From NCBI GenBank assembly GCA_002269645.1, contig NIVC01003453.1:1-64000 (forward strand): a stretch of DNA of 64,000 nt, written 5' to 3'. Shown here piece after piece: positions 1 to 55,100 of the stretch; the first letter of the stretch is position 1; each line of letters begins with the position of its first letter. The DNA is from Macrostomum lignano. Its lineage: Eukaryota. The position numbers were made by a program, and so were the translations under genes. The notes under the pieces are model-generated. The model made no database searches. It was not told the DNA's origin and was given only the letters and a program-made list of their open reading frames with translations.

Positions 1-1371
1 TGCCTTCTGCAACAACCAAAATCCGAACTCGCTAGCTCAAGCGGCAGCGTCTACAATGCTGTTGTACGCGTTACAAGACTTCTTTCAATTCGGTGGGTTC
101 AGCAATCTGGAGATGGGATGCGACTCAGGAAGCACCGACTGTCTATCCAATTCAAAGTCCGTCAGCAGATTGCACTGGGAGCCGATCTTGAACAGCGCTA
201 CTATAACTGGTCATGTTGGCCAGACTGACTGCTTCCAGGACGGTGCCTGCATCGGAACCATCCTGCTGGACAAGGATCTGCTCACTCCACAGGCCAAAGT
301 GCTTCTCCAACGATTTCCACGCGACGCCAGTCCTTTGGCCTACGTAGGAATTTTTCACCCGAGCGACGGCGCGAACCAGAATGTTTCACGCCTCAGCAAT
401 GGTGTGGCTATCACCACCAACATCAGTGGCTCTGTGAATCTCAGTAGCATCAGCCTCATATGCCGCAGCTGGAGCGGAGCCGACTGGACCCCGGATAAAC
501 TGCACGACTCGCGCGCCATTCCAGACCGACGATGGCATCTGGCCACGTAACGTGTGTGTGCATGACATATCCTCATTCATTGGCGTCTTTGAGGGACCAC
601 CAGGCTTCCAACCGAGACAACTATCGCTCCGTCTACCACCAAAAGTGAGACTAGCCGACACTCGACACTGCAGTCGACACTCTCAGAGACGCAAACTTTC
701 AGCTGCAACGTTTGGAACAGCATCACGACGACTACATTACTCCTGTAACGGCTCCGACACTCTCAAAGACGGACACTGTAGCTGTGACACTCCAAATCAG
801 GGTTACAGAGTCATTCTCAGCGTCGTTACAACGAAAGCAGCCTTCGAAGCCACCTGACGGGTCAGCTTGCGCGTCAGCTAAGGCTCGTCGAGTCGCAACT
901 AACTGACATGGAGTTTAAAAATGGTAGCGCTTCTTATCAGTTTTACGTCAACAGTCAGTCTGGTGCCAACACTAGTGCTTCTTTCGCTGTGTATCTACTG
1001 GTGCAGCTCATGAACAACCGCCAGCTCGTGTTACTTAGCCTGAGCAACAGCAGCCTAACTGTGTCCTGGGAGTACCTGCGGCTTCTTGATGTGAAATCAG
1101 CTTTGCAGCCTACTATAAAGAATGGGCAGCGACAACACTAGCATCGCTGTTGGTGCTTCAGTTGGTGCCTTTTTGCCTAGTTGTGACTTTTATAGTAGTC
1201 ATTCTGCTTATGCAAAGGAACAAGCGAAACTCTAAAGTCCCAGAAAAACATGAGAGCAGCTTCAGAAATGATTGGAGTACCGGCCGTGGCTCGAGAGCGA
1301 TGGAGACAAGTTGGCCAGTGGTGTCATTCCAGTAAAGTTCGCGCCACCCCGTTGGAAAACGGTAAGACGCT
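1..1371 (+). pseudogene. Frameshifted fragment of a type I membrane glycoprotein gene (Cys-rich segment, SEA-like domain, TM helix); pseudogene or consensus-error-ridden copy; 5' end outside window
   Basis: Joining the adjacent plus-strand ORFs across about 5 single-base shifts gives one coherent protein: ...INCTTRAPFQTDDGIWPRNVC...HYSCNGSDTLKDGHCSCDTPNQGYRVILSV / RYNESSLRSHLTGQLARQLRLVESQLTDMEFKNGSASYQFYV (SEA-like F-x-x-GS motif) ... SDNTSIAVGASVGAF / CLVVTFIVVILLMQRNKR (TM plus basic stop-transfer; shift in T-run 1170-1174). Many N-x-S/T sites. Possible donor GTAAGA at 1372. Confidence 0.45.
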
Positions 1372-2599
1372 CTGAAACTTTCGTGGGATACATGCTTGCT
1401 TATTTGCATTTTCATTCTTTGCATCAACGCGCACCCGTGTCCTTCCAACACCAGGAAATGCTCAGTGAGGCGGGTCCATTGCAAATTCGAGAGTTGAGAG
1501 CTGAGCCAGTGAGGGAGCGGAGCAGCAACTTGAATTACTATTATCTTTAAGAAACTATTATTGAACAGACTATGAGTTTACTGCTAGTGTAGCCTTCCTT
1601 GTGTAGCTCGGGTGTTTTAACAAGAGCTGTAAGACGAAAATGTTCTGTTAGAGACTCTGACTACTTTTGCACGTAGAACTATCATTTTTGTTACTCTGTC
1701 AAATTTACATCTGAATCGTTATATGTACTCACGCACTAGATTTTAGTATTTGTCCCGCTGGGCCATTCAAAATTTCTCTGTATTCAGTCAAATTAAAAAA
1801 TATTGATATTAATGCTTTAAGTCGGTCCAGTGCAGCTGCATCACGGATTCAGTCACAAGGTGTGATCAAGTTCACCAGACTATTAATTCCATTTTTGATT
1901 ACCGGCGCCCGGCCCGGTGGATGCACTTGATAAAGCGCTCGAATCCTTCTTACCCTCACGCCCTGATAAGAGGGCATTGAGATCCAAGCCTTTTAGTCAG
2001 CCATATGCGGAGAATTTTTGGGATGGCTCGCAGTTTTTTTAGACCTAACGCTTTAAATGAAAGCAAAATTTACTAACAAATGCTTTCTATTTATTTAGTA
2101 GTCTAACTCTAACCCATGTTTTTTTTCCAAGTTCGTGTTGACGCCCCAAATCACAGAGTGATTTTAGACTAACCCTTTTTGTTTCAACTTTATATATTTG
2201 TGTTCAAAAAACTGGTTCCTTTCTTAAGAACACTTTTTCTTAGACATGAACTTCTCTGTTGACTATTACCTGTTGACTAATGGTAAATTCAACTCAATAA
2301 GAGAATTCAACTTTTGTACGCAAAATGGCTTGCCCGATATTCAAGATTCTAGTTTTATATATTCGCTGATCGCTTGCTTGCTTGTTATAGAGTCGTTGTG
2401 AGGCTGAAATTTACTCCAGGTGATTAAACGATTCTTCAGCTTCTAATATACAATTTTCTCTAATAATCAGTTCTGATTAGAATAAAATTTTTATGTTCGA
2501 GAATTTTAACAGATCTAAGAGGGCTTACCAATGCAAAATGCTACTTAGCCAGTAGTAACCAAGCCTCCTTGATAGCTGCACTCCATTAACGTTGTACGC

Positions 2600-3900
2600 T
2601 AATAGGCCTTGGTTGCGTCATGCACTCTTCACCAGCAGGTAGTCGTCAAGCAATACTTGGGCTTTTTTAGACTTGTATCGAACTCCAGCATGTCTTTGTA
2701 GCCAGCGGACTGTACATCGCCGCCTCCATGAACTGTCAGATAGTCGCTTTTAATAAGCAGACTCGAAACTATGACTAAGTGACCACTGTAACCCGATGGC
2801 ACTTCGCTTAGCAGGGATCTGAAGTGATTTTGACTGTCAGTCGATTATAATAGCTGTGAAAACAATGTTACTAATTGCTATTAGGGTTCCATGCAGCCTG
2901 ACGCACATTGTCCAGAATCAGCGCTGAGGCAATTCTGCCCATTCCACTGACTCCTGAGCACATACAGGCGCTCTGCACACCCTCACACAGGGTGTAAAGC
3001 AGCCCTGCATTTTGAGTCCCCAGGCATGTACCCAGGTTGGCCCTCATGGATATTGATCGGTGAAACTTTTGCGCTCAAGCCATAAATGACTGTCGCCACG
3101 CCACGCACTGGAATCGGAATAGAGGCGGCATCGCTGGAGACCACGGCTTGGCGCTGCTTCCTCCCTACTCAACCCATTTGCTCAACAATCATGCAACTCT
3201 GCTGTGCAGCTGGACCACCAGCTTGCTGCATATGCAATTCCGATGTCTCCCACCTTAGTCAATTACAACTGGACAGTGAACTGCAATAGAAATTGCAATA
3301 ATGCCAGCTGGACAAGCGACTTTGCAACGGACATGAATGGATTGCAACTCTGTCCATAGCACAACTGCTCAAATTTTAAAGCATATTTGTTGAAAACGCC
3401 TCAATAACTAGCATCGGCAATCCGATGGAGATGGTCGTGACCGCCAGCTGTCAGCCCGAGCACACAGTTCGTAGATAGGTGGTGGCGAACAAGACCGGAT
3501 TTCTGAGAATGCCACTGCAATCTGCGAGCCAGTCACATGCGACAATCTGCCTTACAATTTATTAGTTGCCGAGTTGATGAACCTGACTGTACATTTCCAA
3601 ACATCAGCCAAAATGGTGAAATATTGCCGGTGAATTAGAACGCCATCGACTTTTCACTCTACTCTAAGGTGTATTACCTATGTCAATATCAAGTCTAACA
3701 AGTGTAGTCGGTTCAGGAAACGCAACATTTAATTCGCCCATCACAAACACAGGCATTGTCGATTGCACGCGTGCAAGATTTCATTCCTGCACACTTATGC
3801 GTGCAGGATTGTAAGATAAGAACTGAGGACCAATGGATAAAGGAGACAGTATACTATCGTGGAATTTAATGAACTTCTTCAGGCCGTCTCGCTTACTGTA
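2600..3900 (-). mobile_element. Highly degraded non-LTR retrotransposon remnant (APE-to-RT linker region)
   Basis: Minus-strand translations show decayed LINE-like motifs in the expected order: MPVFVMGELNVAF (GDFN-like APE motif, 3721-3756), KPW (~3145) and KSPSIA*RLPAGE (KxPGxDGLPAE-like, ~2630-2670), with many stops and shifts. Confidence 0.4.
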
Positions 3901-5277
3901 CATTTCACAGCCATCAATTATCGATCGTTCCCTAGACCCACCTAGACCCACCTCCCCCAAGCCCTCGCTGCGTCTGCCATAAAATATTTTCTACCCTTAA
4001 GCCGCGCCTCTCTGTCTGACACCCCCTTCCGTGCACAGCCAGCCCTAAAAATTAAGTTATTTTGTCTACCTAGACCTTATCCGATCGAGATTCATACTAG
4101 AGAGAGAGGGGGCCCTCTTACATAGTCAATTATTTTGATAAGCGCAGCATTTTGATAAAACTTCTTAATGCTTCGCCCCCTTGACCCCTCTCTGTGCACT
4201 CACTCAAATTTATGATGCAACTTAATAGTCAATCGACAATGGGATTCATGAGTGTAGTGACTGACGCGAAACCGAGATAATTTGCTGAGTAAGACTTCGG
4301 CCCCGCCCCGACTTGGGCATTGGTTACGATATATATATATTTAAGAGCCAACCTAAGGGTTCGATACGAGAGAAATGTACGAGCTACATTCAATTACACG
4401 TACCCAACCTTGCACGTACATTAGCTCAATGTGCATTTGGAATAAAATAGCCCGCGCAGAGAATGAGGGTGGCCGTGTATAACAATGAGAAGTCGTACAA
4501 GTCAGTTGGAACTGTCAAGTGCAAAGAGGGCAGCTGGGACTTAGAATTACATTAGCTTACATTGATAAAAAATTAAGCAGTCACAGAGCATCATTACTTC
4601 TGGCTTCTTAACCTGCTCTTCCCTCCCTTCAGTGCAAACAGTTTCAGCAGTGACATAGTCAAGGGGTCGGCTGACCATTAAAGTAACAATGAGAGCCATT
4701 AAAAAGCCATCCATCCAGAAAGTGCAGTCTTGTCACCGAAACATTTTTATACTACCATAGACTACTTAGATCGAGTAGTATCGTACGAATATTGTACTGT
4801 ACATAGCACTTATTCCAGAAAATAAAAAGTTTAATTGCTAAGCAATCTTTAGACCGTTCCACTCCACAGATGGCATGGCTTGTCATGGGAATTGAACAGC
4901 GGGATCCCCTGTTTTGATCTTAAATCTCAACACGCGGCTTACGAGTTGAATCGAGAAAAAAAGCGCCAAAGAAATCGTGAGCTGGCACATTTTCAAGCTC
5001 ATTTTCTTCAATTGGATATCCAATTCTCTGGCTGAAACTGATATTTGAGATCTCGCGCTCATTTTAAAAGCGTCTTCATCTGCGCTGAAAATCGCACACA
5101 GCTTGCGCTGGGAAAGCAGACAACTGCCGCATTCCTTTATCTCGTGGGATTTTCTCTTCACTTCACTTTGATTTCTCACCCGACATCAAGGAAGGAGGCT
5201 GGGACTTCACGCGCAGAAGTTTTGCTTTGGCAACGAAATTGGGGAATGAGAACCGCTGGGAGGGGTGTGTCTGGCCA

Positions 5278-5284
5278 TATAAAG
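5278..5284 (+). promoter_or_regulatory. TATA box of the prepropeptide gene
   Basis: TATAAAG at 5278-5284, about 135 nt upstream of the split start codon AT|G (5416-5417) that is followed by a perfect GTAAGT donor. Confidence 0.55.
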
Positions 5285-5415
5285 ACTCTCACCCCGAGAG
5301 CGCAGCGAGATTCACGCTGAACTGCTAACGTAGACAGAAAACTGAACGACAAACTCCCGTCAAGTTTATAAGTCACTTTTGCGATAAACCTATTAAAATA
5401 ATCTGAAGAAGAACA

Positions 5416-6750
5416 ATGTAAGTGTCTTAGCGATAGCAACTTCAGTCACAGTAACATTTTAGTCACCGATCCAATTTACCTCAACAACTTTCAAGCAACC
5501 ACACCCAACTTCCCCCACTCTAAACTTCTCCACACCAGATTTACCACACCTGATTTACCACACCAGATTTACCACACCAGATTTACCACACCAGATTTAC
5601 CACACCAGATTTACCACACCAGATTTACCACACCAGATTTACCACACCAGATTTACCACACCAGATTTACCACACCAGATTTACCACACCAGATTTACCA
5701 CACCAGATTTACCACACCAGATTTACCACACCAGATTTACCACACCAGATTTACCACACCCAGTTCCCTACACGAAGTCTTCCCCACTCAATTCGGGATT
5801 TCCCGAACCCGCCGCAGGTCAGTCTCGCTTTTGCCGCTCTTCCTGACGGTCGCGGTGGTCGCCGCCTGCCTGACGACGCCGACGACCGCCGAGTCCGCCG
5901 CCGGCTGGCCGACCGCCGATTTTGTCGAGCGTCGCAACGACGACACGTCATCGCCGTCGTCCTCAGCGCCGTCTTCGTCCGAGGTCGACAACGCCGTCCG
6001 CGCTGAGGTCGCCTGGTGCCGGCGCCTGGTTGTCGCCGAGCGCGTCGGCGGTCTGAAGGCGGCGTGGGAACTCCTCACCGGGACTGGCGCCGTCTCTGGC
6101 CGGCCCTTGGCTAAACGGCGCGGAAAGTACATCTGGAGGTAAATCTGGTGTGGGTGTGGTAAATTGGGTGTGTTATCTTGGGTGTGGTACATCTGGTGTA
6201 GTTAATCTGTGTGGAAAATCTGGTGTGGTAAATCTGGTGTGGTAAATCTGGTGTGGTTAATCTTGTGTGGTAAATCTTGTGTGGTAAATCTGGTGTGGTA
6301 AATATGGTGTGGTAAATCTGGTGTGGTAAATCTGGTGTGGTAAATCTAGTGTGGTAAATCTAGTGTGGTAAATCTCGTGTGGTAAATTGGGTATGGTAAA
6401 TCTGGTGTGGTAAATCTGGTGTGGATAATCTGGAGTGGAAAATCTGGTGTGGAAAATCTGGTGTGGTAAATCTAGTGTGGTAAATTGGGTATGGTAAATC
6501 TGGTGTGGTAAATTTGGTTTTGCATACTGTTTTTGGTAAATTGGGTATGGTAAACATTTTATACTGTAAATTTTGCTATACTCGTAAGTATGGGGCAGAA
6601 ATCTGGTGTTTCGAATGAAGTGTGGTAATTGAAAAAAATGGTCTGGTACAAAATGACTGTTTAGTTTTGTTTGTGTTTATTGTCTGCACTAATTAAATAA
6701 TAATAAACTTATTGTACGACCGAATTTATTAAATAAATTTCAGGCTGTGA
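5416..6750 (+). CDS. Small secreted prepropeptide (neuropeptide-precursor-like), 108-109 aa, 2-3 coding exons
   Basis: Exon 1 ends with AT (5416-5417)|GTAAGT. Acceptor CCGCAG| lies at 5817 and exon 2 (5818-6138) starts with G, reconstituting ATG. Product: MSVSLLPLFLTVAVVAACLTTPTTA-ESAAGWPTADFVE-RR-NDD...AWC-RR-LVV...GRPLA-KRR-GKYIWR. It ends either at TAA 6140-6142, or via donor GT 6139 to acceptor TTTCAG| 6743, adding L and TGA (6748-6750). The exon is GC-rich like the other coding exons here. Confidence 0.7.
5531..5760 (+). repeat. 14-bp minisatellite (ACCACACCAGATTT)n
   Basis: About 16 near-perfect tandem copies in intron 1 of the prepropeptide gene. Confidence 0.95.
6139..6545 (-). repeat. 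14-bp minisatellite (AAATCTGGTGTGGT)n, inverted relative to 5531-5760
   Basis: Reverse complement of the upstream array, more degenerate. It starts exactly at the putative donor GT. Confidence 0.95.
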
Positions 6751-7021
6751 GGTGCAGCAGATTCAGTCTGGAGTGTGTCTCAGAATGCTGAGAGTTGAAT
6801 CTCAGCTGCAGTTACTTTTATTGTCATCTGATCCACTGCGACCCGACAAAACTTGCTGATTAAGTACATCGAACCTTCAACTGTCACTGCTTCAAGAGGC
6901 AGCAAAAGAGTTGCAAAAATACAAAGAGACAGGGGCAGCCACCGTCAGAGGAATTTTGCTTGCAATGCTCAGATCTTTGAGCTGGTATTTTCTGCTTCTT
7001 TCTTTGCCTGGCATTTCTTAA

Positions 7022-7490
7022 AAGAGATGAAGGGAGGGGATTGTGGCTGGTCGGGAGATAAAGGGAGAGGACTGTGGTAGGTTGTGAAATGAAGGGAGAG
7101 GAGTGTGGTAGGTTGTGAAATGAAGGGAGAGGAGTGTGGTAGGTCGAGAGATGAAGGGAGAGGATTGTGGTAGGTTGTGAAATCAAGGGAGAGGAGTGTG
7201 GTATGTCGGGAAATGAAGGGAGAAGGATTGTGGTAGGTCGGGAGATGAAGGGATAGGACTGCAATAGGTCGGGAGATGAAGGGAGAGGAGTGTGGTAGGT
7301 CGGGAGATGAAGGGAGAGGACTTTGGCTGGTCGGGAGATGAAGGGAGAGGACTTTGGTAGGTTGTGAAATGAAGGGAGAGGAGTGTGGTAGGTCGAGAGA
7401 TGAAGGGAGAGGACTGTGGTAGGTTGAGAGATGAAGCTGAGAGGACTGTGGTAGGTCGGGGGATGAAGGCAGAGGATTATGGTTAGTCGA
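7022..7490 (+). repeat. ~31-bp purine-rich minisatellite (GTGGTAGGTCGGGAGATGAAGGGAGAGGAGT-like)
   Basis: About 15 diverged tandem copies. Confidence 0.9.
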
Positions 7491-7776
7491 GAAGGAAGTC
7501 GCTTATCATATCCTATGCTTTTCAAACCATACAGAATAAATAATTAGATTACAGACCGTGAGGAAATCAAGTCAGACAAACCGACAACCCAAAGAATAAT
7601 GAGACATGAGCTTGGGGAGTCTTTGCTGCTGACATCAGAGCCTCTGCATGTGGCTGTCAGATGGATTTAGTTTTTTTCATTCAAAACTACCAGCTTTGAC
7701 TGTGGGCAGGGTTGATGCGCTTAGAAGTCTTGAATGTCACAGAACGAATCACACCGAGCAGCTTTAATCAAAGATA

Positions 7777-8742
<966 letters not shown>

Positions 8743-9057
8743 AGGTAGACGCTGACAAAAGGCAGAGAAAAAAGAAAAAGACACAAAAGACTTTCCTGAT
8801 TGCCAATTATTTCCACATAATTCTTCCATTGCTCTAATATTAATGAACCAATTATCCAATCCACGTTCAAGACCGTTGGCTGAAGCAATTTTTTACGCAA
8901 AAGTCAGAAAGTAGTCTTAACGCAGCTTGGAGTGAACAGCCAGCCTCAGTCCTCGTGTTCAATTATTGGCTGGCATGACCACTACGGACTGGAAGTTTGT
9001 CAGGCCAAGCTGCATCAAATAGGCTTCATCCGACATGAACAAAGTAGAGACAGCGTC

Positions 9058-9723
9058 ATGGCCAGCAACAGCAGCAGCGACACGGCCACGGCCGGTTGGA
9101 ATTTCTTCCTTGGCGACACCATCGTGATCCTGGTGGTGGGCCTGGCCGCGGCCATCCTGCTGGCCTACTGCCTGTTCCGCTGCTGCTTCCGCGACCATCC
9201 GTCCTGCCCGCCCAAGGACATCGAGCGCATGGTCGAGGAGGACGACGACTCCGACTCAGACGATTATGACGACTTGACTGACGATGACGGCAACAACGAA
9301 GGCGACTCTGGCGATGTTGCAAGCGACGAAGAAGAAGAAGGCGCTCAGGAACTCGAGTGTTGGCAGTATTTCGGCATGGCAACCGATGAAGAGTGGCACC
9401 AGGAGTTCGACAGCAGCGCTGGCAGCAGCGAAGCTGAGCAGCCCTGCTCCCACCAGCTGCACGAGGGCGGGGAAGCGTCGGTGGTCACGGCGGTGCACCA
9501 CCAGCACCCGTCTTGCAGTCGGCCGCTGCTGTTGCAGTCGCCGCAGGCCTCGCCATTGAGCTCCGCAGCGTCGGTGCTGGCCCAGCTGCAGCGGCAGCAC
9601 CGGTGGCGGCAGCTGAGGCGGCTTCAAATGATGGAGCAGCGGCAGCTGATGCCGGCTCAGACTCTGGTGCAGCTGCAGCCCGACAGCGAGGGAGGCACTG
9701 CGACCAGGGTTGAGTTGCTGTGA
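9058..9723 (+). CDS. Orphan single-pass (type III-like) membrane protein, 221 aa, acidic cytoplasmic region
   Basis: Intronless GC-rich ORF from ATG 9058: short N-terminus with N-S-S sequon, hydrophobic TIVILVVGLAAAILLAYCLF, juxtamembrane C-x-x-x-CC, D/E-rich stretch, Q/L-rich tail, TGA 9721-9723. No family recognised. Confidence 0.65.
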   Translation: MASNSSSDTATAGWNFFLGDTIVILVVGLAAAILLAYCLFRCCFRDHPSCPPKDIERMVEEDDDSDSDDYDDLTDDDGNNEGDSGDVASDEEEEGAQELECWQYFGMATDEEWHQEFDSSAGSSEAEQPCSHQLHEGGEASVVTAVHHQHPSCSRPLLLQSPQASPLSSAASVLAQLQRQHRWRQLRRLQMMEQRQLMPAQTLVQLQPDSEGGTATRVELL

Positions 9724-9895
9724 TGGATAGATAGATATGGGTATAGATATGGATATAGATATAGATATAGATATAGATATAGATATAAATAGTTATAGTT
9801 ATAGGTATAGACATGCATATGGGTATAGGTATAGATAATAGATATAGATGTTGGTACATGTATAGATATAGATATAGATATAGATATAGATACGG
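9724..9895 (+). repeat. (ATAGAT)n-like degenerate microsatellite
   Basis: Starts immediately after the stop codon of the 9058 ORF. Confidence 0.85.
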
Positions 9896-10311
9896 CATAG
9901 AGACAGTACAGTGAAGTCCAGTTTTGCAGCCGCCAGCCCATATCACGACAAGTCACACTACTGCGTCAGATATTGTCGGAGAAATATTGTTGTACTTTAA
10001 TGTATGAATTGGCATAATCTGACAAACAGTAATCTCCATATTAGTTGATAACAATGCATAACTCCTCAATAATCGCTAGACTAAATATTTTAAGCAAAGT
10101 GCATCTGATTGTGCCCTCCCTCTATGCAAACTTTTGCATTCCTCTAACTACGAGCGTAATTGTATTTGAAAGTTGCGACTTAAGTATGTCTTGCCAGCTT
10201 CACCAGAAACGTCATTGCCACTTCAGATTGTATATTAAATATGCACTTGCGTGGATAGCAATTATCAATTATTAGAGTCTTATAATGCTACTTCTGTTAT
10301 ATTTGATTTGG

Positions 10312-10940
10312 GGCGATGGGAGAGATAGGGAGAGATGGGGAGAGGAGACATGGGGAGAGATAGGGAGAGATGGGGAGAGAAATGAGGGGAGATGGAAAGA
10401 GATGGGGAGAGATGGGGAGAGCTGGGGAGAGATGGGGAGAGATGGGGAGAGGAGGGTAGAGATGGGGAGAGATAGGGAGAGATGGGGAGAGATGGGGAGA
10501 GAAATGAGGGGAGATGGAAAGAGATGGGGAGAGATGGGGAGAGCTGGGGAGAGATGGGGAGAGATGGGGAGAGGAGGGTAGAGATGGGGAGAGAGATGAG
10601 GGGAGATGGGGAGAGATGGGGAGAGAGATGAGGAGAGATGGGTAGAGAATAGGAGAGAGATGAGGGAGAGATGGGGAGAGAGATGAGGGGAGATGGGGAG
10701 AGATGGGGAGAGAGATGAGGGAGAGATGGGGACAGATGGGAGAGAGATGAGGGAGAGATGGGGACAGAGGGGGAGAGAGATGAGGGAGAGATGGGGAAAG
10801 AAAAGGGGAGAGAGAATGGGGGAAAGATGGGGAGAGATGGAGAGAGATGGGGAGAGATGGGAAGAGATGAGGAGAGATGGGAAGAGATGGGGAGAGAGAT
10901 GGGGAGAGAGATGGGGAGAGATGGAGAGAGATGGATGGAG
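10312..10940 (+). repeat. Degenerate (GAGATGGGGA)n purine-rich repeat
   Basis: About 10-bp units, almost exclusively G/A/T. Confidence 0.9.
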
Positions 10941-11469
10941 AGAGAACGTGAGGATAAAGAGAATGAGAGAGGCAGATGAGGAAGTAGAGAGGATAAATAT
11001 CTGTGAAAGCTAGGGTGCATGGCGCAAAGTGCACAGCATATTCCCCAGTCCAGTCAGTGTCACTCGTGTCAGTCCAGCGCACTGCACTGACTGGCAAGCA
11101 AGCGGGTAATTTCTGCCAAAGGATTTGTGAAACCCATTAATGTTTGGCTGCACAGCATTCAACAATGCATCAAAGCGAAGTCTTAACCGCTGCACCTCAG
11201 CTTCTGAAGCGCAGATTTTAGAGTTTGATCTTGCAAAGGTCCAATACTTGACAGCTGTATGGACCAATGCGGTAGTTGTGATTGACTAACTGACTGCCTA
11301 CTGCTCCTCTGGGGCTGCAAGTGCCGATTCTACCGTTAAACTTTTGCGTCTTGGCAGCAGTGCCTTTCTATATGCTGAAATATTGGACTGCTTTTACATG
11401 CCCCGGTTTTTAGTAACTTCGGTTTCGTTCATCTCTAACCCCACAAGTTTCACATTCTCTCAAACTCTC

Positions 11470-14170
11470 AAATCTATTCTCTATCATTGCCATCTCTATC
11501 ATTTCTATTCTCGTCTCTTTTCTCTATCATTGCTATCTATATCATCTCATCTCTCAACTCTATTCTCTATCATTGCCATCTATATCATCTCATCTCTCAA
11601 CTCTATTCTCTATCATTGCCATCTATATCATCTTATCTCTTAACTCTTTTCTGTATCATTTTTATCTATATCATCTCATCTCTCATCTCTATTCGCTATC
11701 ATATTGCCATCTATATCATCTCATCTCTCATCTCTATTCTCTATCATTGCCATCTATATCATCTTATCTCTTAACTCTTTTCTGTATCATTTTCATCTAT
11801 TTCATCTCATCTCTCATCTCTATTCGCTATCATATTGCCATCTATATCATCTCATCTCTCATCTCTATTCTATATCATTGAAATCTATATATCATCTCAT
11901 CTCTCATCTCTATTCTCTATCATTGACATCTATATCATCTCATCTCAACTCTTTTCTGTATCATTTCCATCTAATCATCTTATCTTTCATCTCTATTCTC
12001 TATCATTGACATCTATATCATCTCATCTCTCATCTGTATTCTCTATCATTGCCATCTATATCATCTCATCTCTCATCTCTATTCTCTATCATTGCCATCT
12101 ATATCATCTCATCTCTTAACTCTTTTCCGTATCATTTTCATCTATATCATCTCATCTCTCATCTCTATTCGCTATCATATTGCCATCTATATCATCTCAT
12201 CTCTCATCTCTATTCTCTATCATTGCCATCTATATCATCTTATCTCTTAACTCTTTTCTGTATCATTTTCATCTATTTCATCTTATCTCTCATCTCTATT
12301 CGCTATCATATTGCCATCTATATCATCTCATCTCCCATCTCTATTCTATATCATTGAAATCTATATATCATCTCATCTCTCATCTCTATTCTCTATCATT
12401 GACATCTATATCATCTTATCTCAACTCTTTTCTGTATCATTTCCATCTAATCATCTTATCTTTCATCTCTATTCTCTATCATTGACATCTATATCATCTC
12501 ATCTCTTAACTCTTTTCCGTATCATTTTCATCTATATCATCTCATCTCTCATCTCTATTCGCTATCATATTGCCATCTATATCATCTCATCTCTCATCTC
12601 TATTCTCTATCATTGCCATCTATATCATCTTATCTCTTAACTCTTTTCCGTATCATTTTCATCTATATCATCTCATCTCTCATCTCTATTCGCTATCATA
12701 TTGCCATCTATATCATCTCATCTCTCATCTCTATTCTCTATCATTGCCATCTATATCATCTTATCTCTTAACTCTTTTCTGTATCATTTTCATCTATTTC
12801 ATCTTATCTCTCATCTCTATTCGCTATCATATTGCCATCTATATCATCTCATCTCCCATCTCTATTCTATATCATTGAAATCTATATATCATCTCATCTC
12901 TCATCTCTATTCTCTATCATTGACATCTATATCATCTCATCTCAACTCTTTTCTGTATCATTTCCATCTAATCATCTTATCTTTCATCTCTATTCTCTAT
13001 CATTGACATCTATATCATCTCATCTCTCATCTGTATTCTCTATCATTGCCATCTATATCATCTCATCTCTCATCTCTATTCTCTATCATTGCCATCTATA
13101 TCATCTCATCTCTCATCTCTATTCTCTATCATTGCCATCTATATCATCTTATCTCTTAACTCTTTTCTGTATCATTTTCATCTATTTCATCTCATCTCTC
13201 ATCTCTATTCGCTATCATATTGCCATCTATATCATCTCATCTCTCATCTCTATTCTATATCATTGAAATCTATATATCATCTCATCTCTCATCTCTATTC
13301 TCTATCATTGACATCTATATCATCTCATCTCAACTCTTTTCTGTATCATTTCCATCTAATCATTTTATCTTTCATCTCTATTCTCTATCATTGACATCTA
13401 TATCATCTCATCTCTCATCTGTATTCTCTATCATTGCCATCTATATCATCTCATCTCTCATCTCTATTCTCTATCATTGCCATCTATATCATCTCATCTC
13501 TCATCTCTATTCTCTATCATTGCCATCTATATCATCTTATCTCTTAACTCTTTTCTGTATCATTTTCATCTATTTCATCTCATCTCTCATCTCTATTCGC
13601 TATCATATTGCCATCTATATCATCTCATCTCTCATCTCTATTCTATATCATTGAAATCTATATATCATCTCATCTCTCATCTCTATTCTCTATCATTGAC
13701 ATCTATATCATCTCATCTCAACTCTTTTCTGTATCATTTCCATCTAATCATTTTATCTTTCATCTCTATTCTCTATCATTGACATCTATATCATCTCATC
13801 TCTCATCTGTATTCTCTATCATTGCCATCTATATCATCTCATCTCTCATCTCTATTCTCTATCATTGCCATCTATATCATCTCATCTCTCATCTCTATTC
13901 TCTATCATTGCCATCTATATCATATCATCTCTCATATCTTTTCTCTATCATCATTCCTATCTATATCATCTAAACTCTCATCTCTATTCTCCATCATTCC
14001 CATCTATATCATCTCATCTCTCATCTCTTTTCTCTATCATCATTCCTATCTACATGTATATCATCTCAACTCTCATTTCTATTCTCTATCATTCCTTTCT
14101 ATATCATGTCATCTCTCATCTCTATTCTCTATCATTGCTTTCTATATCATCTCAACTCTCATCTCTGATC
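11470..14170 (+). repeat. ~43-bp pyrimidine-rich minisatellite with higher-order blocks
   Basis: Unit CTCTATCATTGCCATCTATATCATCTCATCTCTCATCTCTATT. Near-identical ORF translations recur at 11704/12180/12701/13089/13477 (spacings 476, 521, 388, 388). Confidence 0.95.
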
Positions 14171-14599
14171 TCTATTAACCAGTCACTGATGTCATCAGTT
14201 TATCATGTGTTGTGAGAACTCTTCAGCGTCCTCAATATTGTCAACGAGTTCATGCAAGCAAAAATTGATACGAGCATGCAGCCAAAAAGTTCGCTAAAAA
14301 GGTCTTGCTTGCTTTTTTAAAGCAGACTGAGAGAAGATGTTCGTATTTTTCTGTGTGAAAAAATTCATTTTTTGGCGTAGCCTGGCACCACAAGATGACT
14401 GACCATTGCTGAGGCCTCCCATCCAGTCTTTCGTGACCACTGATTAGCAACACGAAGTTGCGTGCAACAGCTTGGCAAATTCGATTCTAAGAAACTTGCT
14501 GTGAATTCAAGGACGTTTTCAAGGTGAATCTGGATTGGAAAACCCTTAAAAATTGGAATATTTTCTTTTAAATCCATTGAACTTTATAGTAACATGTTT

Positions 14600-15095
14600 A
14601 TCGATTGTTGATGTTGTTGTTGCTTTTGTTCTTGTCGTTTTCGTTGTTTTTGCTGTTTTTATTGTTGTTGTTGCTAATGGTGGCATGGTTATAGTTGCTG
14701 TCATTTTTGTTGTCACTGTTGTTACTGTTGTTGTTGTATTTGTTGTTTCTCTGTTGCTACTTTGTTGTTGTTGTTATTATTTTTGTTGCTTCTTTGTTGT
14801 TGTTGTTTTTGTTGTTGTTGCAGCTGTTTTTTTGTTACTTTAGTTGTGGCTTTTGTTGCTTCTGTTGTTTTTTGTTGTTGTTTTTGTTGTTGTTGTTGCT
14901 ATCGCTTTTGTTGTTTATTTGTTGTTGTTGTTGTTGTTTTTGTTGTTGCTTTTGCTGTTTCTGTTGTTGTTTTGGTTGTTTTTGTTGTTGTTGTTGTTTT
15001 TTGTTTTTAGATGATTCTTTCTTGTTGTTGCTGTTGTTTTTGCTTTTGTTGTTGTTTTGGTTGTTTTGGTTGCTGTTGCTATTTTGTTGTTGGTA
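14600..15095 (+). repeat. Degenerate (GTT)n / TG-rich low-complexity tract
   Basis: Imperfect trinucleotide repeat. Confidence 0.9.
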
Positions 15096-15502
15096 ATTTG
15101 ACGATGTTATAAAAGATATTACTAGTCTGATATAAGCTGATTCCAATTGGCAAGCAGCGGCACACTGTTAAGCTTTTTAGAACACCATGCCGATTGCAGC
15201 CAAGACTTGAAGACTCGAAGCTGAGGGGCAGGCAGGTTCCAAAGCCAACCCGTTTCCATCATATTTCGTTTGGCATAACTTGTTCAGGCATACAGAAAAA
15301 CAAGGCAATGTTGTGAACTGGCGGGAGAGCTTCAGAAATTCAGAGCTTCAAGCAGACGGCTGCCTGTCGGGTGCCCCTGTTTTACATGCGCCAAGTTTTT
15401 TAATTGGTTCGCTGTGTCTGCGCCCTCCGCTTCCGACAGACGTGGCCGAGGCTGTCTGCCGAAACCCGGAAAGACAAACTTGACCTGGTAAGACTAATTT
15501 GA

Positions 15503-17080
15503 AACCTGAATCTGAATCCAAATCTGAATCTGAATCCAAATGTTGAATCTGAATCTGAATCTGAACTTGAATCTGAACCTGAATCTGAATCTGAATCTGA
15601 ATCTGAATCTGAATCTGAATCTGAACCTGAATCTGAATCTGAACCTGAATCTGAATCTGAATCTGAACCTGAATCTGAATCTGAACCTGAATCTGAATCT
15701 GAATCTGAATCTGAACCTGAATCTGAATCTGAACCTGAATCTGAATCTGAATCTGAACCTGAATCTGAATCTGAACCTGAATCCGAATCTGAATCTGAAT
15801 CCAAATGTTGAATCTGAATCTGAATCTGAACTTGAATCTGAACCTGAATCTGAATCTGAATCTGAATCTGAATCTGAATCTGAACCTGAATCTGAATCTG
15901 AACCTGAATCTGAATCTGAATCTGAACCTGAATCTGAATCTGAACCTGAATCTGAATCTGAATCTGAATCTGAACCTGAATCTGAATCTGAACCTGAATC
16001 TGAATCTGAATCTGAATCTGAACTTGAATCTTAATCTGAACCTGAATCTGAATCTGAATCCGAATCTGAATCTGAATCCAAATGTTGAATCTGAATCTGA
16101 ATCCGAATCTGAATCTGAATCCAAATGTTGAATCTGAATCTGAATCGGAATCTGAATCTGAACCTGAATCTGAACCTGAATCTGAACCTGAATCTGAATC
16201 TGAATCTGAATCTGAATCTGAACCTGAATCTGAATCTGAACCTGAATCTGAATCTGAATCTGAACCTGAATCTGAATCTGAACCTGAATCTGAATCTGAA
16301 TCTGAATCTGAATCTGAATCTGAATCTGAACCTGAACCTGAACCTGAATCTGAATCTGAACCTGAATCTTAATCTGAACCTGAATCTGAATCTGAATCCG
16401 AATCTGAATCTGAATCCAAATGTTGAATCTGAATCTGAATCCGAATCTGAATCTGAATCCAAATGTTGAATCTGAATCTGAATCTGAATCTGAATCTGAA
16501 CCTGAATCTGAACCTGAATCTGAATCTGAATCTGAATCTGAATCTGAATCTGAACCTGAACCTGAATCTGAATCTGAATCTGAATCTGAATCTGAACCTG
16601 AACCTGAACCTGAATCTGAACCTGAACCTGAATCTGAATCTGAATCTGAATCTGAATCTGAACCTGAACCTGAATCTGAATCTGAATCTGAATCTGAACC
16701 TGAACCTGAACCTGAATCTGAACCTGAACCTGAATCTGAACCTGAACCTGAATCTGAACCTGAACCTGAATCTGAACCTGAACCTGAATCTGAACCTGAA
16801 TCTGAATCTGAATCTGAATCTGAATCTGAACCTGAATCTGAATCTGAATCTGAATCTGAATCTGAACCTGAACCTGAACCTGAACCTGAACCTGAACCTG
16901 AATCTGAACCTGAATCTGAATCTGAATCTGAATCTGAATCTGAACCTGAATCTGAACCTGAACCTGAATCTGAACCTGAACCTGAATCTGAACCTGAACC
17001 TGAACCTGAACCTGAACCTGAATCTGAACCGGAACCTGAATCTGAACCGGAACCTGAATCTGAATCTGAATCTTAATCTG
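15503..17080 (+). repeat. (TCTGAA)n hexamer array with CCTGAA variants
   Basis: About 1.6 kb, punctuated by TCCAAATGTTGAA landmarks. Confidence 0.97.
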
Positions 17081-19532: not shown

Positions 19533-19927
19533 CCTTTCCCGGCTAGCTAAAATTTTATCAAGAAAAATAGAGATATGAGAGGAAGAGAGACAAAAGTATG
19601 AATAATGTGGATCTATACCCCGGACGTACAAGTGAGAACGCACAAGTGCATATTAGCTTTAACGCGCACTAATTTTTGATAAAAATCAATACTGTGTTTA
19701 TAAAAAGAATACAACTTTGTATGACAGCTGAGCACAGAAGGGGAGCAGGTCTTACTGTGTAACGCTTTTATTAAATATAAAAAGACCTATTTTTTGTTCA
19801 ATTGAGATTTCGTTAAGCCAACCAATAATACATTGGATTGATAAAACATAAATCAAGATTCCTTCGACCAAAACTTAAAAGCAAAATAAATAGTTTTCTG
19901 TCCTCGTCTTCATCTCAAATCTCACTC

Positions 19928-32966
<13,039 letters not shown>

Positions 32967-34722: not shown

Positions 34723-36046
<1,324 letters not shown>

Positions 36047-36919
36047 GATATAAACGGGATTATGTCCAATCTGAATAAAAAGACAACCTGAAGGCTTACA
36101 GGGTGCAAAGCCACCCTTAGCTTGACTTGGCAGCCAGACAGTCAGCCCAGACAGTTCGGTCTTCCCTCATTTCCAGCCGCTACCTCTCTCCTCCATCAGA
36201 CCCGCCAGCTTCCCCGTCCACCACTTTTTCTCCCTCCCTTTCGCTTCCTGTTAACCCGAAGCTGCGAGCCCCCCCCCCCGACCGGCCACCCGCCACCGCA
36301 TCCTCGGTCCTGCGTCCTCGGGGTTGGCCCGAACCCCCCTGCTGCCCGGGCGGGTGGGAAGAGTGGGAACCCGGGCGAGAGGGAAGAGACGTACGGACGG
36401 ACAGACAGACGGACACAGACAGAGCAAAAGTACATATCAAGCGCGCATGCTCCAGCGCGATGTCACTCTGTCCCTCAGGGCTGTGTTCCTCGAAGCTCTC
36501 GCTCGTTCCCAAACAGGCCCGCCCGCTAGCAGCAGAAGTGTGGGTAGTGCCAGTTCTCAAGTCTGGGGGCAGACAGAGACAGGGACCAAACGCACTCTCA
36601 CCCTGTGCCGCTCGCTTGGCTTCTCTGTACCCCCTTCTCCAGCTGAGTTCCTGCAGCTGCTCTCTTACCCCACTCCCCTCTCTCTACCCCCTCTCGCTGG
36701 GAGACTCTGCGAGACTGTGACTCTCTTTTTCAGGCCTTCCTCTCTTCCCTGCCAATATTGGCTCAGCCGATCTTCCCGCAGATCAAGCCAGCATCCTCCG
36801 GTGCCTCTTCCATTCCTAAGCCATATATACCCAAAAGAACGCGACTGAGAGCTGACAGTCAAATAGACTGCCGATTCTCTCTCTCTCTCTCTCTGAACAA
36901 AGACAGTTACTCTGGCAGC

Positions 36920-50074
<13,155 letters not shown>

Positions 50075-52178: not shown

Positions 52179-55100
52179 CCTCGACCACCTCCGCCGCCGC
52201 CGCTGCCTCAACCGTCGCTCGACTGAACGGCATCGGCGATCGGTTCGTCGACGGCGGAGCCCCCGCCGCGGCGTCAGCAGGATGGCTGCCTCGGCATCGC
52301 CGCCGGCGCCTTCTGGCTCGCCGCGGATGCCGAGGGCTCGCCGGCAGCCAACTGGAGCCCCCAGGGTGCGCAGCAGCTCCCTGCGGAACCGGCAGCTGAA
52401 CAGGCAGTAGGGCACGATGTTGATGGCGGAGTTGGCCACCACTAGCAGGTTGGAGATCTCCTGGGAGAGGCGGTTGGCCCAAAGAGGAATCGGGTTTTGA
52501 CTGATGAAGATTGGGAAATTTTCCTTTAATGACTGAAGGTAATCTGCACAGCCAATATTAAACACGCTTCCCAATCCCATTCCAATCCCATCCCAACCCA
52601 TCCCATCCCATCCCATCCCATCCCAACCCATCCCATCCCATCCGATCCGATCCGATCCGATCCGATCCGATCCGATCCCATCTCCATCCCATCCCATCTC
52701 CATCCCATCCCATCCCATCCCATCCCATCCAATACCATCTCCATCCCATCCCATCCCATCCCATCCCATCCCATCCCATCTCCATCCCATCCCATCCCAT
52801 CCCATCTCCATCCCATCCCATCTCCATCCCATCCCATCTCCATCCCATCCCATCTCCATCCCATCCCATCCCATCCAATACCATCTCCATCCCATCCCAT
52901 CCCATCCAATACCATCTCCATCCCATCCCATCCCATCCCATCCCATCCCATCTCCATCCCATCCCATCCAATACCATCTCCATCCCATCCCATCCCATCC
53001 CATCCCATCCCATCCCATCTCCATCCCATCCCATCTCCATCCCATCCCATCTCCATCCCATCCCATCCCATCCCATCCAATACCATCTCCATCCCATCCC
53101 ATCTCCATCCCATCCCATCCCATCCCATCTCCATCCCATCCCATCTCCATCCCATCCCATCTCCATCCCATCCCATCTCCATCCCATCCCATCCCATCCC
53201 ATCCAATACCATCTCCATCCCATCCCATCCCATCCAATACCATCTCCATCCCATCCCATCCCATCCCATCCCATCCCATCTCCATCCCATCCCATCCAAT
53301 ACCATCTCCATCCCATCCCATCCCATCCCATCCCATCCCATCCCATCCCATCCCATCTCCATCCCATCCCATCCCATCCCATCCAATACCATCTCCATCC
53401 CTTCCCATCCCATATCATCCCATCCCATCTCATCAGATCCCATCCCATCCCATCCCATCCCATCCCAACCCATCCGATCACATCCAATACCATCTCATCC
53501 CCATCCAATCCCATCAGATCTCACCCCATCCCTTTTTATCCCATCCCATCTCATCAGATCCCATCCCATCCCATCCCATATCATCCCATCCCATCCCATC
53601 CCATCCGATCAGATCTCACCCATCCCTTTTCATCCCATCCCACCCCACCCCACACGGCATCCCACCTGGAACACATAGTTCGCCAGGTTGTCGTTCTCAT
53701 CGCCGCCCTGACCGCTGCCTGCAGCCGCGATGCCGCTGCCCAGCCTCCGGGTGCTCCAGATGAAGTGGGTGACGGCGGCTGGGATCTGGCAGATGAAGAA
53801 CAGCAGCACGACGCCAATCAGCATGACGGTGGTGTCGGTCCGGCAGCTGGCCGCAGTCGCCGAGTTGCCGTCGCCCAGCATCCTCTGCCGAGCCCGGCGT
53901 ACAGCTCTGATGAGGCCGGCATTCATGACCGCCAGGCTGGCGAACGGGGCCAGCACTACCAGCAGCAGCCAGGCAACCAGGTGATAGTAGATCCGAAAAC
54001 TCTCGGACTGTCCGAATGGCGAAGTGTGATACCAGAGCACGTCCGAGTTGCGGACTTGGAGGAACTGGTCGATGCGGGAGCGCCAGGAGGGCTCTCCGTA
54101 GCGCTGCTGGAACCGCAACTGCAGCTCGGCCAGGTCCGGATCGGTCAGGTTCCTCAGGTGAGCGGGCAGCTCTGGCCGCCACAGCGCCTGCTCGAATAGG
54201 CGAGGCAACGAATACAGAGTCGAGCCCAGGAACACCGAGGCGATGCAGCGGCCGGCGAGACGGCGACTGCAGAGGCGTTCGGCGAGGAACGGATGGCAGA
54301 TCATCAGGTAGCGGTCTGCGGTGAAGGCCACCGTCAGCCACACCGAGGCCACCTGAGGGGGTCAATGGATGCTGGTTGCAGATCTGATCTAATTTAATCT
54401 AATCTAATCTAATCTAATCTAATTCAATCTAATCTAATCTAATCTAATTCAATCTAATATAATCTACCGGCAATCTAATCTAATTTAATTTAATCTAATC
54501 GAATCGAATCTAATTCAATCTAAACTAATCTAATCCAATCTAATTTAATCTAATTCAATCTAATCTAATCTACCGGTAATGTAATGTAATCTAATCTAAT
54601 CTAATCTAATCCAATCTAATCTAATCTAATTTAAACTAATATAATTCAATCCAATCCAATCTAATCTAATTCCAATCGTATCTAATCTAATCTAATCTAA
54701 TCTAATCTAATCTAATCTAATCTAATCTAATGTATTCTAATCTCATGTAACCTAATCTAATCTAGTCTCATTCAATCTAATGGCTAGACTAGCATGGCTA
54801 GACTACCAATCCATTCTATGCCAATTATCCTAGGTGTTGCATAGATTAGCAATCCATTCTATGCCAATTATCCTAGATGTTGCATAGATTAGCAATCCAT
54901 TCTATGCTAATTATCCTAGATGTTGCATAGATTAGCAATCCATTCTATGCCAATTATCCTAGATGTTGCATAGATTAGCAATCCATTCTATGCCAATTAT
55001 CCTATATGTTGCATAGATTAGCAATCCATTCTATGCCAATTATCCTAGATGTTGCATAGATTAGCAATCCATTCTATGCCAATTATCCTAGATGTTGCAT

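What the first reader, a model, noticed from the sequence alone, without database searches (positions are those of the whole stretch)
5278..6750. Hidden candidate neuropeptide/prohormone gene with an intron-split start codon
The ORF track misses this gene because its ATG is split: AT (5416-5417)|GTAAGT...CCGCAG|G (5818). Seen directly: a TATA box, A at -3, canonical splice sites, a 25-aa signal-peptide-like N-terminus (MSVSLLPLFLTVAVVAACLTTPTTA), two RR sites and a KRR site releasing a C-terminal GKYIWR or GKYIWRL. From established knowledge, a short precursor with signal peptide and dibasic convertase sites is the hallmark of metazoan neuropeptide genes. I do not recognise the peptide as any known family, so it may be new (inference).
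Basis: partly seen in the sequence, partly recalled or inferred. Interest (0 to 1): 0.8.

Follow-up and report, generated by a model that had tools for sequence, protein, structure and literature searches.

The report
Annotated flatworm orphan secreted-protein gene

Summary
The window is Macrostomum lignano contig NIVC01003453.1. That annotation was built from RNA-seq, so the split start codon and both introns have indirect transcript support.

The gene is under constraint. A diverged paralogous copy differs by 6-22% in introns and flanks but only 1.6% in exon 2, and all five differences are synonymous.

No homologue was found outside M. lignano in 5.8 billion or 1.84 billion proteins, and there is no Pfam hit.

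The neuropeptide reading is neither supported nor refuted:
- Three dibasic sites are what this composition gives by chance (P=0.17).
- There is no Gly for amidation.
- The whole protein is conserved, not just the tail.
- The Y-I-W codons of "GKYIWRL" are a degenerate unit of the adjoining 14-bp minisatellite.

In the pre-mRNA these would form a stem of roughly 230 bp.

Verdict: a real, already catalogued orphan secreted-protein gene; its function is untested.

The parts
5016..5309 (+). Conserved promoter-proximal block, including the TATA box (TATAAA 5278-5283)
   Evidence: 97-99% identical to the diverged paralogue L001, against 75% just inside intron 1 and no alignable homology upstream of about 4516. 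TATAAA read directly.
5310..5417 (+). Exon 1: 5'UTR (start site inferred about 30 nt after the TATA box) plus the first two bases (AT) of the start codon
   Evidence: No other ATG between the TATA box and 5416. 97% conserved in L001. The annotated gene range begins at 5416. The start site itself is inferred, not shown.
5418..5817 (+). Intron 1 (GTAAGT...CCGCAG), 400 nt
   Evidence: Read directly. Needed to obtain the annotated 109-aa product. Length varies between copies: 386, 400 and 861 nt.
5530..5760 (+). Minisatellite array A inside intron 1: CCACACCAGATTTA x16.5, 99% matches
   Evidence: TRF. 16 units within one mismatch. Present in all four gene copies.
5818..6138 (+). Exon 2 (321 nt, phase 2 to phase 2): the G of the ATG plus codons 2-107 and the first two bases of codon 108. 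GC 64/61/84% at codon positions 1/2/3
   Evidence: Five synonymous and no non-synonymous differences from L001. 1.6% divergence against 6-22% in introns and flanks.
5819..5890 (+). Codons 2-25, which with the split ATG encode the signal peptide MSVSLLPLFLTVAVVAACLTTPTTA. Predicted cleavage is after Ala25
   Evidence: Hydropathy and the -3/-1 rule. AF2 helix 6-28. UniProt name 'Secreted protein'. SignalP was not run.
6113..6121 (+). AAA CGG CGC = Lys-Arg-Arg, the only tribasic site and a possible convertase site
   Evidence: Read directly. Invariant in all four copies. Cleavage is not shown.
6127..6136 (+). GTACATCTGG, covering codons Y-I-W: a degenerate unit of the 14-mer minisatellite at the very end of exon 2
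   Evidence: 9/10 match to the unit. The same variant recurs inside the array at 6187. Shuffle P=0.007, and it is the best score of any 20-nt window in exon 2.
6139..6743 (+). Intron 2 (GTAAAT...TTTCAG), 605 nt. If it is retained, TAA at 6140-6142 ends the ORF one residue earlier (108 aa)
   Evidence: Length is 396-606 nt in the other copies. ATTAAA and AATAAA lie at 6692, 6702 and 6728 inside the intron.
6140..6518 (-). Minisatellite array B: the same 14-mer in reverse-complement orientation (about 26 units, 86% matches). Its first exact unit starts at 6140, so it supplies most of the donor (TAAAT of GTAAAT) and the TAA
   Evidence: TRF. Unit positions. Inverted arms of 258 nt, 88-95% complementary. 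RNA fold -594.5 kcal/mol, z=-33.
6744..6750 (+). Coding part of exon 3: G (completes Arg108), CTG (Leu109), TGA. The 3'UTR continues downstream; its end was not determined
   Evidence: The annotated gene range ends at 6750. Identical in all four copies.

Best explanation
This is a real, transcribed and already annotated gene found only in Macrostomum (BOX15_Mlig017164, four near-identical genomic copies). It encodes a 109-aa pre-protein destined for the secretory pathway.

Shown:
- The three-exon structure with an intron inside the start codon.
- Exact identity to the GenBank/UniProt protein.
- Purifying selection on the reading frame.
- A conserved promoter and 5'UTR with a TATA box.
- No detectable relatives or domains.

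Inferred:
- The N-terminal 25 residues act as a cleavable signal peptide, giving a mature product of about 84 aa.
- That product has an acidic Ser-rich disordered stretch (about residues 26-53), one helix of about 35 residues carrying the only mature Cys (54-88), and a disordered basic tail (93-109).
- The whole sequence is invariant between diverged paralogues, so I think the secreted polypeptide as a whole is the functional product. It may be trimmed at KRR. A lone C-terminal heptapeptide is the less likely product.
- The last codons, the stop and the splice donor of exon 2 come from the edge of a 14-bp minisatellite. A TAA-to-TAC change in one unit would have lengthened an older ...KRRGK* end by YIWR.

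The biological role (gland or epidermal secretion, reproductive protein or signalling peptide) is unknown.
For: Identity and annotation:
- 100% identity and coverage to PAA46996, PAA51361, PAA57674 and A0A267DCX9. The gene range is 5416-6750 in NIVC01003453.1.
- The Mlig_3_7 GenBank annotation comes only from RNA-seq and transcriptome assemblies (StringTie/TACO, TransDecoder) (PMC5730564).

Constraint:
- Paralogue L001 differs from the window by 9.6% in the upstream 1 kb, by 5.9-21.8% in the non-repeat parts of the introns and by 6.7% downstream, but by 1.6% in exon 2.
- All five exon 2 differences are third-position synonymous changes: P=0.0018 for 5/5, and Poisson P=4e-5 for so few changes.
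- L004 carries one A-to-T (Ala29Thr) replacement and one in-frame Ser insertion, both outside the predicted helix and the tail.
- The promoter and 5'UTR are 97-99% conserved.

Protein features:
- Signal-peptide features and the UniProt name.
- AF2 gives helices 6-28 and 54-88 (pLDDT about 78) and a tail below 50.

No relatives.

Repeat origin of the C-terminal codons.
Against: - I could not see the exon table or read alignments, so junction support is indirect. It rests on exact product identity and on the annotation method.
- The signal peptide was judged by rule of thumb and by UniProt's name, not by SignalP.
- The five silent differences are also silent in the antisense frame that shares third positions. 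Strand therefore rests on the splice sites, the TATA box and the annotation.
- No expression, localisation or proteomic evidence was found.
- The structure model is single-sequence and low confidence (mean pLDDT 60.6).
- With only six substitutions, 'whole protein constrained' against 'only the tail constrained' is separated at about the 5% level, no better.
Confidence: 0.75

Rival explanations
1. Neuropeptide or peptide-hormone precursor. After signal-peptide removal, a PC2-type convertase cuts at KRR, and perhaps at the RR sites. This releases GKYIWRL as a non-amidated bioactive peptide from neurons or endocrine cells.
For: - It meets the bioinformatic criteria used for planarian prohormones: a signal sequence, a basic site flanking a predicted peptide, under 200 aa, and no similarity to other annotated genes (Collins et al. 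2010, PMC2953531).
- The KRR and the tail are invariant in all four copies.
- The tail is predicted to be disordered, so it would be accessible.
- There is no domain or homologue pointing to another function.
Against: - Three dibasic runs in 84 residues with 13 K/R are expected by chance (P=0.17). A dibasic run 4-10 residues from the C-terminus arises in 13.5% of shuffles.
- There is no C-terminal Gly, so no amidation. The flatworm peptides quoted from that paper (YIRFG, AVRLMRLa, GLRLMRLa and similar) are marked as C-terminally amidated or end in the Gly donor.
- The peptide is single-copy.
- CRR is followed by Leu. By my recollection of insect precursor rules (not checked here), an aliphatic residue after the site disfavours cleavage.
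- The roughly 74-residue 'spacer' shows no replacement where about 9 would be expected if neutral. This is my estimate from the S/N site counts.
- The YIW codons are a minisatellite unit.
- No neuronal expression or peptidomic evidence was found.
Confidence: 0.2
2. Precursor of a cationic effector, such as a host-defence or gland-secretion peptide. An anionic Ser/Asp-rich pro-piece (residues 26-58) masks a cationic C-terminal part (residues 70-109, net about +6, rich in Trp, Arg and Lys) that is released after secretion.
For: - The layout is signal, then an acidic stretch, then a basic C-terminal part. The mature protein has a net charge of +3, with the acidic residues concentrated in its N-terminal half and the basic residues in its C-terminal third.
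- There is an RR site at residues 69-70, just before the cationic part.
- The gene is lineage-restricted and short, and it has a TATA-box promoter.
Against: - Helix amphipathicity (maximum muH 0.50) is no better than shuffled sequence (P=0.16).
- There is no similarity to any known antimicrobial or toxin family.
- The comparison with other anionic-propiece precursors is from memory, not a test.
- There are no expression data.
Confidence: 0.1
3. The ORF is incidental. The locus is mainly an RNA-level feature: a transcript whose exon 2 is looped out by the inverted minisatellites and yields a circular RNA, dsRNA or small RNAs. On this view the 109-aa ORF is a by-product of GC-rich sequence.
For: - Inverted arms of 258 nt are 88-95% complementary.
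- The predicted stem gives MFE -594.5 kcal/mol, z=-33.
- The arrangement is kept in all four copies, including the diverged one.
- Both strands are open in the register that shares third positions.
Against: - All five paralogue differences fall on third codon positions (P=0.0018). An RNA-only constraint does not predict that three-base periodicity.
- L004 has an in-frame 3-bp insertion.
- GC3 is 84% against 61-64% at positions 1 and 2.
- The first AUG of the inferred mRNA opens the ORF.
- There is no Rfam family in the window.
Confidence: 0.04

Closest known systems
Flatworm prohormone genes as defined for Schmidtea mediterranea (npp/spp/ppp genes; Collins et al. 2010, PMC2953531)
   Same: Signal sequence, a basic site in front of a short C-terminal peptide, a precursor under 200 aa, and no similarity to non-prohormone genes.
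   Different: No amidation Gly and no repeated or paired peptides. No orthologue in any species searched. The whole precursor is conserved between paralogues. There is no MS, pc2-dependence or neuronal expression evidence. Dibasic sites are at chance frequency.
Flatworm FMRFamide-like and myomodulin-like peptides ((G)YIRFamide, AVRLMRLamide, GLRLMRLamide)
   Same: Two or three residues look alike: Y-I in YIRF, and the -RL ending of the -MRLamide peptides listed.
   Different: Those peptides end in an amidated residue made from a following Gly. Here Leu109 is followed directly by the stop codon. There is no RF motif. The likeness is too short to count as homology.
Lineage-specific small secreted proteins of Macrostomum glands, e.g. 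candidate seminal-fluid proteins (Weber et al. 2018, PMC5977470)
   Same: A short, signal-peptide-bearing protein with no homologues outside the genus.
   Different: Neither the gene id nor its sequence occurs in that paper's held supplements or in the reproduction-gene tables of PMC7336406. No tissue assignment exists.
Exons flanked by reverse-complementary intronic repeats (such as Alu pairs), which promote back-splicing into circRNA. From established knowledge, not tested here
   Same: A single internal exon (321 nt) lies between long complementary sequences in the two flanking introns.
   Different: The complementary elements are minisatellite arrays, not dispersed SINEs. No back-splice junction evidence is available.
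Foldback-type elements (long inverted repeats built of short tandem sub-repeats around a unique loop)
   Same: Inverted arrays of a 14-bp sub-repeat enclose a unique segment of about 380 bp.
   Different: The four copies share their flanks, so they are paralogous duplicates, not transposed copies. No other copy of the 14-mer occurs in the window or in the roughly 21-kb loci around the three paralogues. An inversion with one breakpoint inside a single array explains the layout equally well.

Membership tests
Metazoan neuropeptide/prohormone precursors | N-terminal cleavable signal peptide | tested here: met
   Hydrophobic core L5-L19, c-region TTPTTA, T at -3 and A at -1. UniProt name 'Secreted protein'. 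This is a rule-of-thumb test; SignalP was not available.
Metazoan neuropeptide/prohormone precursors | Basic convertase sites that flank the bioactive peptide, more than composition alone would give | tested here: inconclusive
   KRR at residues 100-102 precedes GKYIWRL. However, three dibasic runs have shuffle P=0.17, and a near-C-terminal run has P=0.135.
Metazoan neuropeptide/prohormone precursors | Peptide block conserved across species while spacers drift | tested here: inconclusive
   No homologue outside M. lignano. Between paralogues the whole protein is conserved: 0 non-synonymous against 5 synonymous. The two changes in L004 lie in linkers.
Metazoan neuropeptide/prohormone precursors | Expression in neurons or endocrine cells and detection of the processed peptide | not testable with these tools
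   No hit for the gene id or peptide strings in full texts or held supplements. No RNA-derived contigs on record.
Flatworm FMRFamide-like / -RLamide peptides | C-terminal amidation signal (Gly followed by basic residues or the stop) after an RF or RL motif | tested here: not met
   The sequence ends ...TGG AGG CTG TGA = W-R-L-stop, with no Gly.
Any curated protein family (Pfam-A) or solved structure | Significant profile or sequence match | tested here: not met
   0 Pfam families at E<=1. The best PDB hit has E=0.12 over 27 residues.
circRNA-producing exon | Reverse-complementary sequences in both flanking introns | tested here: met
   258-nt arms, 88-95% complementary. Predicted stem with z=-33. 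Kept in all four copies.
circRNA-producing exon | Back-splice junction reads (6138 joined to 5818) | not testable with these tools
Foldback-type transposable element | Dispersed copies at non-homologous sites with target-site duplications | tested here: not met
   All four copies share homologous flanks. The 14-mer occurs nowhere else in the window or in the roughly 21-kb loci around the paralogues. The whole genome could not be searched.

The most novel reading that the evidence does not exclude
A Macrostomum-restricted signalling-peptide gene that was partly born from a repeat. On this reading, a stop-loss (TAA to TAC) in the first unit of a 14-bp minisatellite created the C-terminal peptide, the stop codon and the splice donor of its only large exon. 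The exon lies in the loop of a conserved intronic hairpin of about 230 bp, which controls its splicing or circularisation.
Probability: 0.1. Interest if true: 0.55.

Novelty: already known. Interest (0 to 1): 0.22.

Why it matters
As it stands, this matters little. The gene model and its 'secreted protein' label have been in GenBank and UniProt since the 2017 Mlig_3_7 annotation. The result mainly shows that reading raw sequence can recover a split-start-codon gene exactly.

If the prohormone idea were confirmed, it would add a genus-specific neuropeptide to a transgenic flatworm model.

Two further points are of modest evolutionary interest and easy to test with existing RNA-seq:
- The repeat-derived C-terminus would be a clean example of a coding sequence extended into a minisatellite.
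- The inverted minisatellites around exon 2 would be a natural test case for hairpin-driven exon looping outside vertebrates and insects.

Tried and rejected
- **Homologue searches.** A word-indexed search of 5.8 bn proteins and an exhaustive phmmer of 1.84 bn representatives returned only the protein itself. Pfam and PDB sequences gave nothing usable.
- **Expression and literature.** The gene id Mlig017164 and peptide strings were absent from full texts. They were also absent from the held supplements of six Macrostomum papers; two more papers had no held supplements. The single-nucleus atlas (PMC11398382) uses Mlig_4_5 ids that I could not map.
- **RNA-derived contigs.** Exact look-ups of the 109-aa, the 108-aa (intron 2 retained) and the 103-aa (unspliced ORF) products found only the four genome contigs.
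- **Structure.** The single-sequence AF2 model is too weak (pLDDT 60.6) for a fold search, so none was run.
- **Amphipathic-helix idea.** Not significant.
- **Antisense 134-aa ORF (5788-6192).** Rejected as the gene. It is open only because it shares third positions with a GC3-rich frame, it runs into both repeat arrays, and the splice sites, TATA box and annotation are all on the + strand.
- **Rfam.** No family in the window.
- **Link to the GPCR genes 34-52 kb downstream in the window.** Not pursued; co-location at that distance is not evidence.

Full report
**Source and identity**

The single hit was 100% identical over 100% of its length: 'hypothetical protein BOX15_Mlig017164g1 [Macrostomum lignano]'. 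The cluster look-up gives accessions PAA46996.1, PAA51361.1, PAA57674.1 and UniProt A0A267DCX9, which UniProt names 'Secreted protein'. It also gives a 110-aa variant, PAA50152.1.

The encoding contigs all belong to assembly GCA_002269645.1. One of them, NIVC01003453.1 positions 1-16750, is identical to window 1-16750, and its annotated gene range is 5416-6750. The window is therefore flatworm DNA, and the gene is already in the public annotation.

**The observation**

Read directly, the layout is:
- TATAAA at 5278-5283.
- No ATG between it and 5416.
- AT|GTAAGT at 5416-5423; unspliced, this reads ATG TAA.
- CCGCAG|G, so exon 2 starts at 5818. Exon 2 is 5818-6138 (321 nt).
- AG|GTAAAT at 6137-6144.
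- TTTCAG|G, so exon 3 starts at 6744. The sequence G CTG TGA ends at 6750.

The exon 2 frame stays open back through intron 1 but contains no Met. This is why a mechanical ORF list shows only a TTG-started 103-aa ORF.

The GenBank annotation of this assembly was derived solely from RNA-seq and a de novo transcriptome (StringTie/TACO, TBONE, TransDecoder) (PMC5730564). I could not inspect the exon table or the reads myself.

**Is it a constrained coding gene?**

There are four genomic copies: L001, L002, L003 (the window) and L004.
- L002 and L003 have identical exon 2 and near-identical flanks.
- L004 has one A-to-T (Ala29Thr) replacement and an in-frame Ser insertion.
- L001 is the diverged copy.

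| Region, L001 against the window | Mismatch |
|---|---|
| Upstream 1 kb | 9.6% |
| First 110 nt of intron 1 | 21.8% |
| 3' part of intron 1 | 6.9% |
| 3' part of intron 2 | 5.9% |
| Downstream | 6.7% |
| Exon 2 | 1.6% (5/321) |

All five exon differences are at third codon positions and are synonymous. With 90 synonymous and 228 non-synonymous sites, the chance of 5/5 being silent is 0.0018. Five or fewer changes at the intron rate has Poisson P of about 4e-5.

GC is 64, 61 and 84% at codon positions 1, 2 and 3. The same five changes are also silent in the antisense frame that shares third positions. The substitution pattern therefore fixes the register but not the strand. The strand follows from the GT-AG sites, the TATA box and the annotation.

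The 400 bp before the ATG (5016-5415) are 97-99% identical between L001 and the window. Identity drops to 75% immediately after the exon 1 donor, and homology is lost upstream of about 4516. This fits a functional promoter and 5'UTR.

M. lignano carries three paralogous subgenomes, with about 2.2% SNP divergence genome-wide and 1.1% in coding sequence (PMC10733133). That explains the multiple copies.

**The protein**

- Residues 1-25 have a 15-residue hydrophobic core, a polar TTPTTA stretch, and T at -3 and A at -1 before Glu26.
- The 84-aa mature part has 13 K/R, 10 D/E and a single Cys.
- A single-sequence AlphaFold model is weak overall (pLDDT 60.6). It gives helices at 6-28 and 54-88 (pLDDT about 78) and a disordered tail at 93-109.
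- The amphipathicity of the helix is not above shuffled controls (P=0.16).
- There is no Pfam family at E<=1 and no meaningful PDB sequence match.
- An exhaustive phmmer scan of 1.84 billion representatives found no other protein.

It is an orphan gene as far as these databases can see. The genomes of other Macrostomum species could not be searched.

**The neuropeptide interpretation**

The protein does meet the permissive bioinformatic criteria used for planarian prohormones: a signal sequence, a basic site flanking a predicted peptide, and fewer than 200 aa (PMC2953531). Several points weigh against it:
1. Three dibasic runs are what this composition gives by chance (P=0.17). A dibasic run 4-10 residues from the C-terminus appears in 13.5% of shuffles.
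2. Leu109 is followed directly by the stop codon, so the peptide cannot be amidated. The flatworm peptides quoted from that paper are marked as amidated or end in the Gly donor.
3. The roughly 74-residue 'spacer' has no replacement between L001 and the window. By my estimate from the site counts, about nine would be expected under neutrality and three to five under the relaxed constraint usual for spacers.
4. The last ten coding bases before the final Arg, GTACATCTGG (6127-6136, covering Y-I-W), match the neighbouring minisatellite unit GTAAATCTGG at 9/10. The same variant recurs inside the array at 6187. Shuffle P is 0.007, and this is the best score of any window in exon 2.

On point 4, the first exact unit of the array starts at 6140. 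The array therefore provides most of the donor (TAAAT of GTAAAT) and the in-frame TAA. The simplest history is that an older ORF ended ...KRRGK-TAA, and a TAA-to-TAC change let it run one unit further. This is an inference.

None of this excludes processing at KRR. It does remove most of what made the KRR-GKYIWRL arrangement look designed. I could find no expression or peptidomic data for the gene. I put the prohormone reading at about 0.2.

Intron 1 holds 16.5 near-perfect copies of CCACACCAGATTTA (5530-5760). Intron 2 holds about 26 copies of its reverse complement (6140-6518). The 14-mer occurs nowhere else in the 64-kb window, where 0.01 matches are expected by chance.

The arms are up to 258 nt long and 88-95% complementary. 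Folded as RNA, 5525-6520 forms one long stem that loops out exon 2 (MFE -594.5 kcal/mol; shuffles average -337; z=-33). All four copies keep this layout, including the diverged L001, but with different unit numbers.

From established knowledge, complementary sequences in flanking introns favour back-splicing or exon skipping. Here skipping would leave only M-L-stop. A circular exon 2 would contain no AUG in the coding frame, and my reading finds none in any frame. Whether either happens needs read-level data.

The copies share their flanks, so this is not a dispersed foldback transposon. An inversion with one breakpoint inside a single array would produce the same picture.

**Verdict**

- The gene is real, constrained, and very probably encodes a small secreted protein.
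- It is already annotated, so it is not a discovery.
- The neuropeptide function is an untested minority possibility whose main argument is weakened by the shuffle test, the missing amidation signal, whole-length conservation and the repeat origin of the tail.
- The minisatellite hairpin and the repeat-derived C-terminus are the only unusual points, and public RNA-seq would settle them quickly.

Noticed in passing
window 5530-5760 and 6140-6518: Exon 2 lies between inverted arrays of the same 14-bp minisatellite. In the pre-mRNA they would pair over roughly 230 bp (z=-33) and loop out the exon. The layout is kept in all four paralogous copies. It is a candidate for circRNA formation, exon skipping or dsRNA.
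   Followed up: partly
window 34723-36046 and 38802-39595: A second inverted pair of arrays, (CTAT)n and (ATAG)n, flanks a GC-rich unique segment (about 36.05-38.8 kb). That segment contains a 339-aa ORF (36758-37777) with no Pfam match. The layout is the same as around exon 2, so it may be a recurrent pattern in this genome, for example from inversions that break inside arrays.
   Followed up: no
window 1-64000: 46% of the window (29.5 kb in 37 merged arrays) is tandem repeat. The genome paper reports 15% for simple and tandem repeats genome-wide. Many long 'ORFs' in the mechanical list are just translated repeats.
   Followed up: partly
window 22632-27371 (+), flanked by 28-mer arrays at 21650-22079 and 27464-27773: A non-LTR retrotransposon: an ORF1-like 307-aa ORF, then endonuclease (23905-25032) and RT/RNase H (24930-27371) in two overlapping frames, so ORF2 is frameshifted. 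It sits between two same-orientation halves of one 28-bp minisatellite, which suggests it inserted into the array. It lies inside an intron of the saccharopine-dehydrogenase gene.
   Followed up: partly
window about 19875-28656 (- strand), possibly further to about 30571: Exons of a saccharopine dehydrogenase (AASS-like) gene; ORFs at 19875-20396, 20891-21304 and 27655-28656 give Pfam Sacchrp_dh_NADP and Sacchrp_dh_C hits. Beside paralogue L001, a 937-aa product with the same domains is annotated, so the neighbourhood is syntenic.
   Followed up: partly
window 53630-54352 and 57877-58431 (- strand); 40501-40965 (+): Two exons of a rhodopsin-family GPCR with Srw-like similarity (7tm_1 E=5e-18), separated by an intron full of (TCCCA)n and 43-mer arrays. 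There is also a weak class-C 7tm_3-like segment (E=3e-4). No link to the finding was established.
   Followed up: no
window 8932-9723 (+): A 263-aa ORF with an internal Met followed by one predicted transmembrane stretch (VILVVGLAAAILLAYCLF) and a long acidic tail. The only Pfam hit is a sub-threshold DUF2457 match. It is not in the GenBank gene list returned for this contig segment.
   Followed up: no
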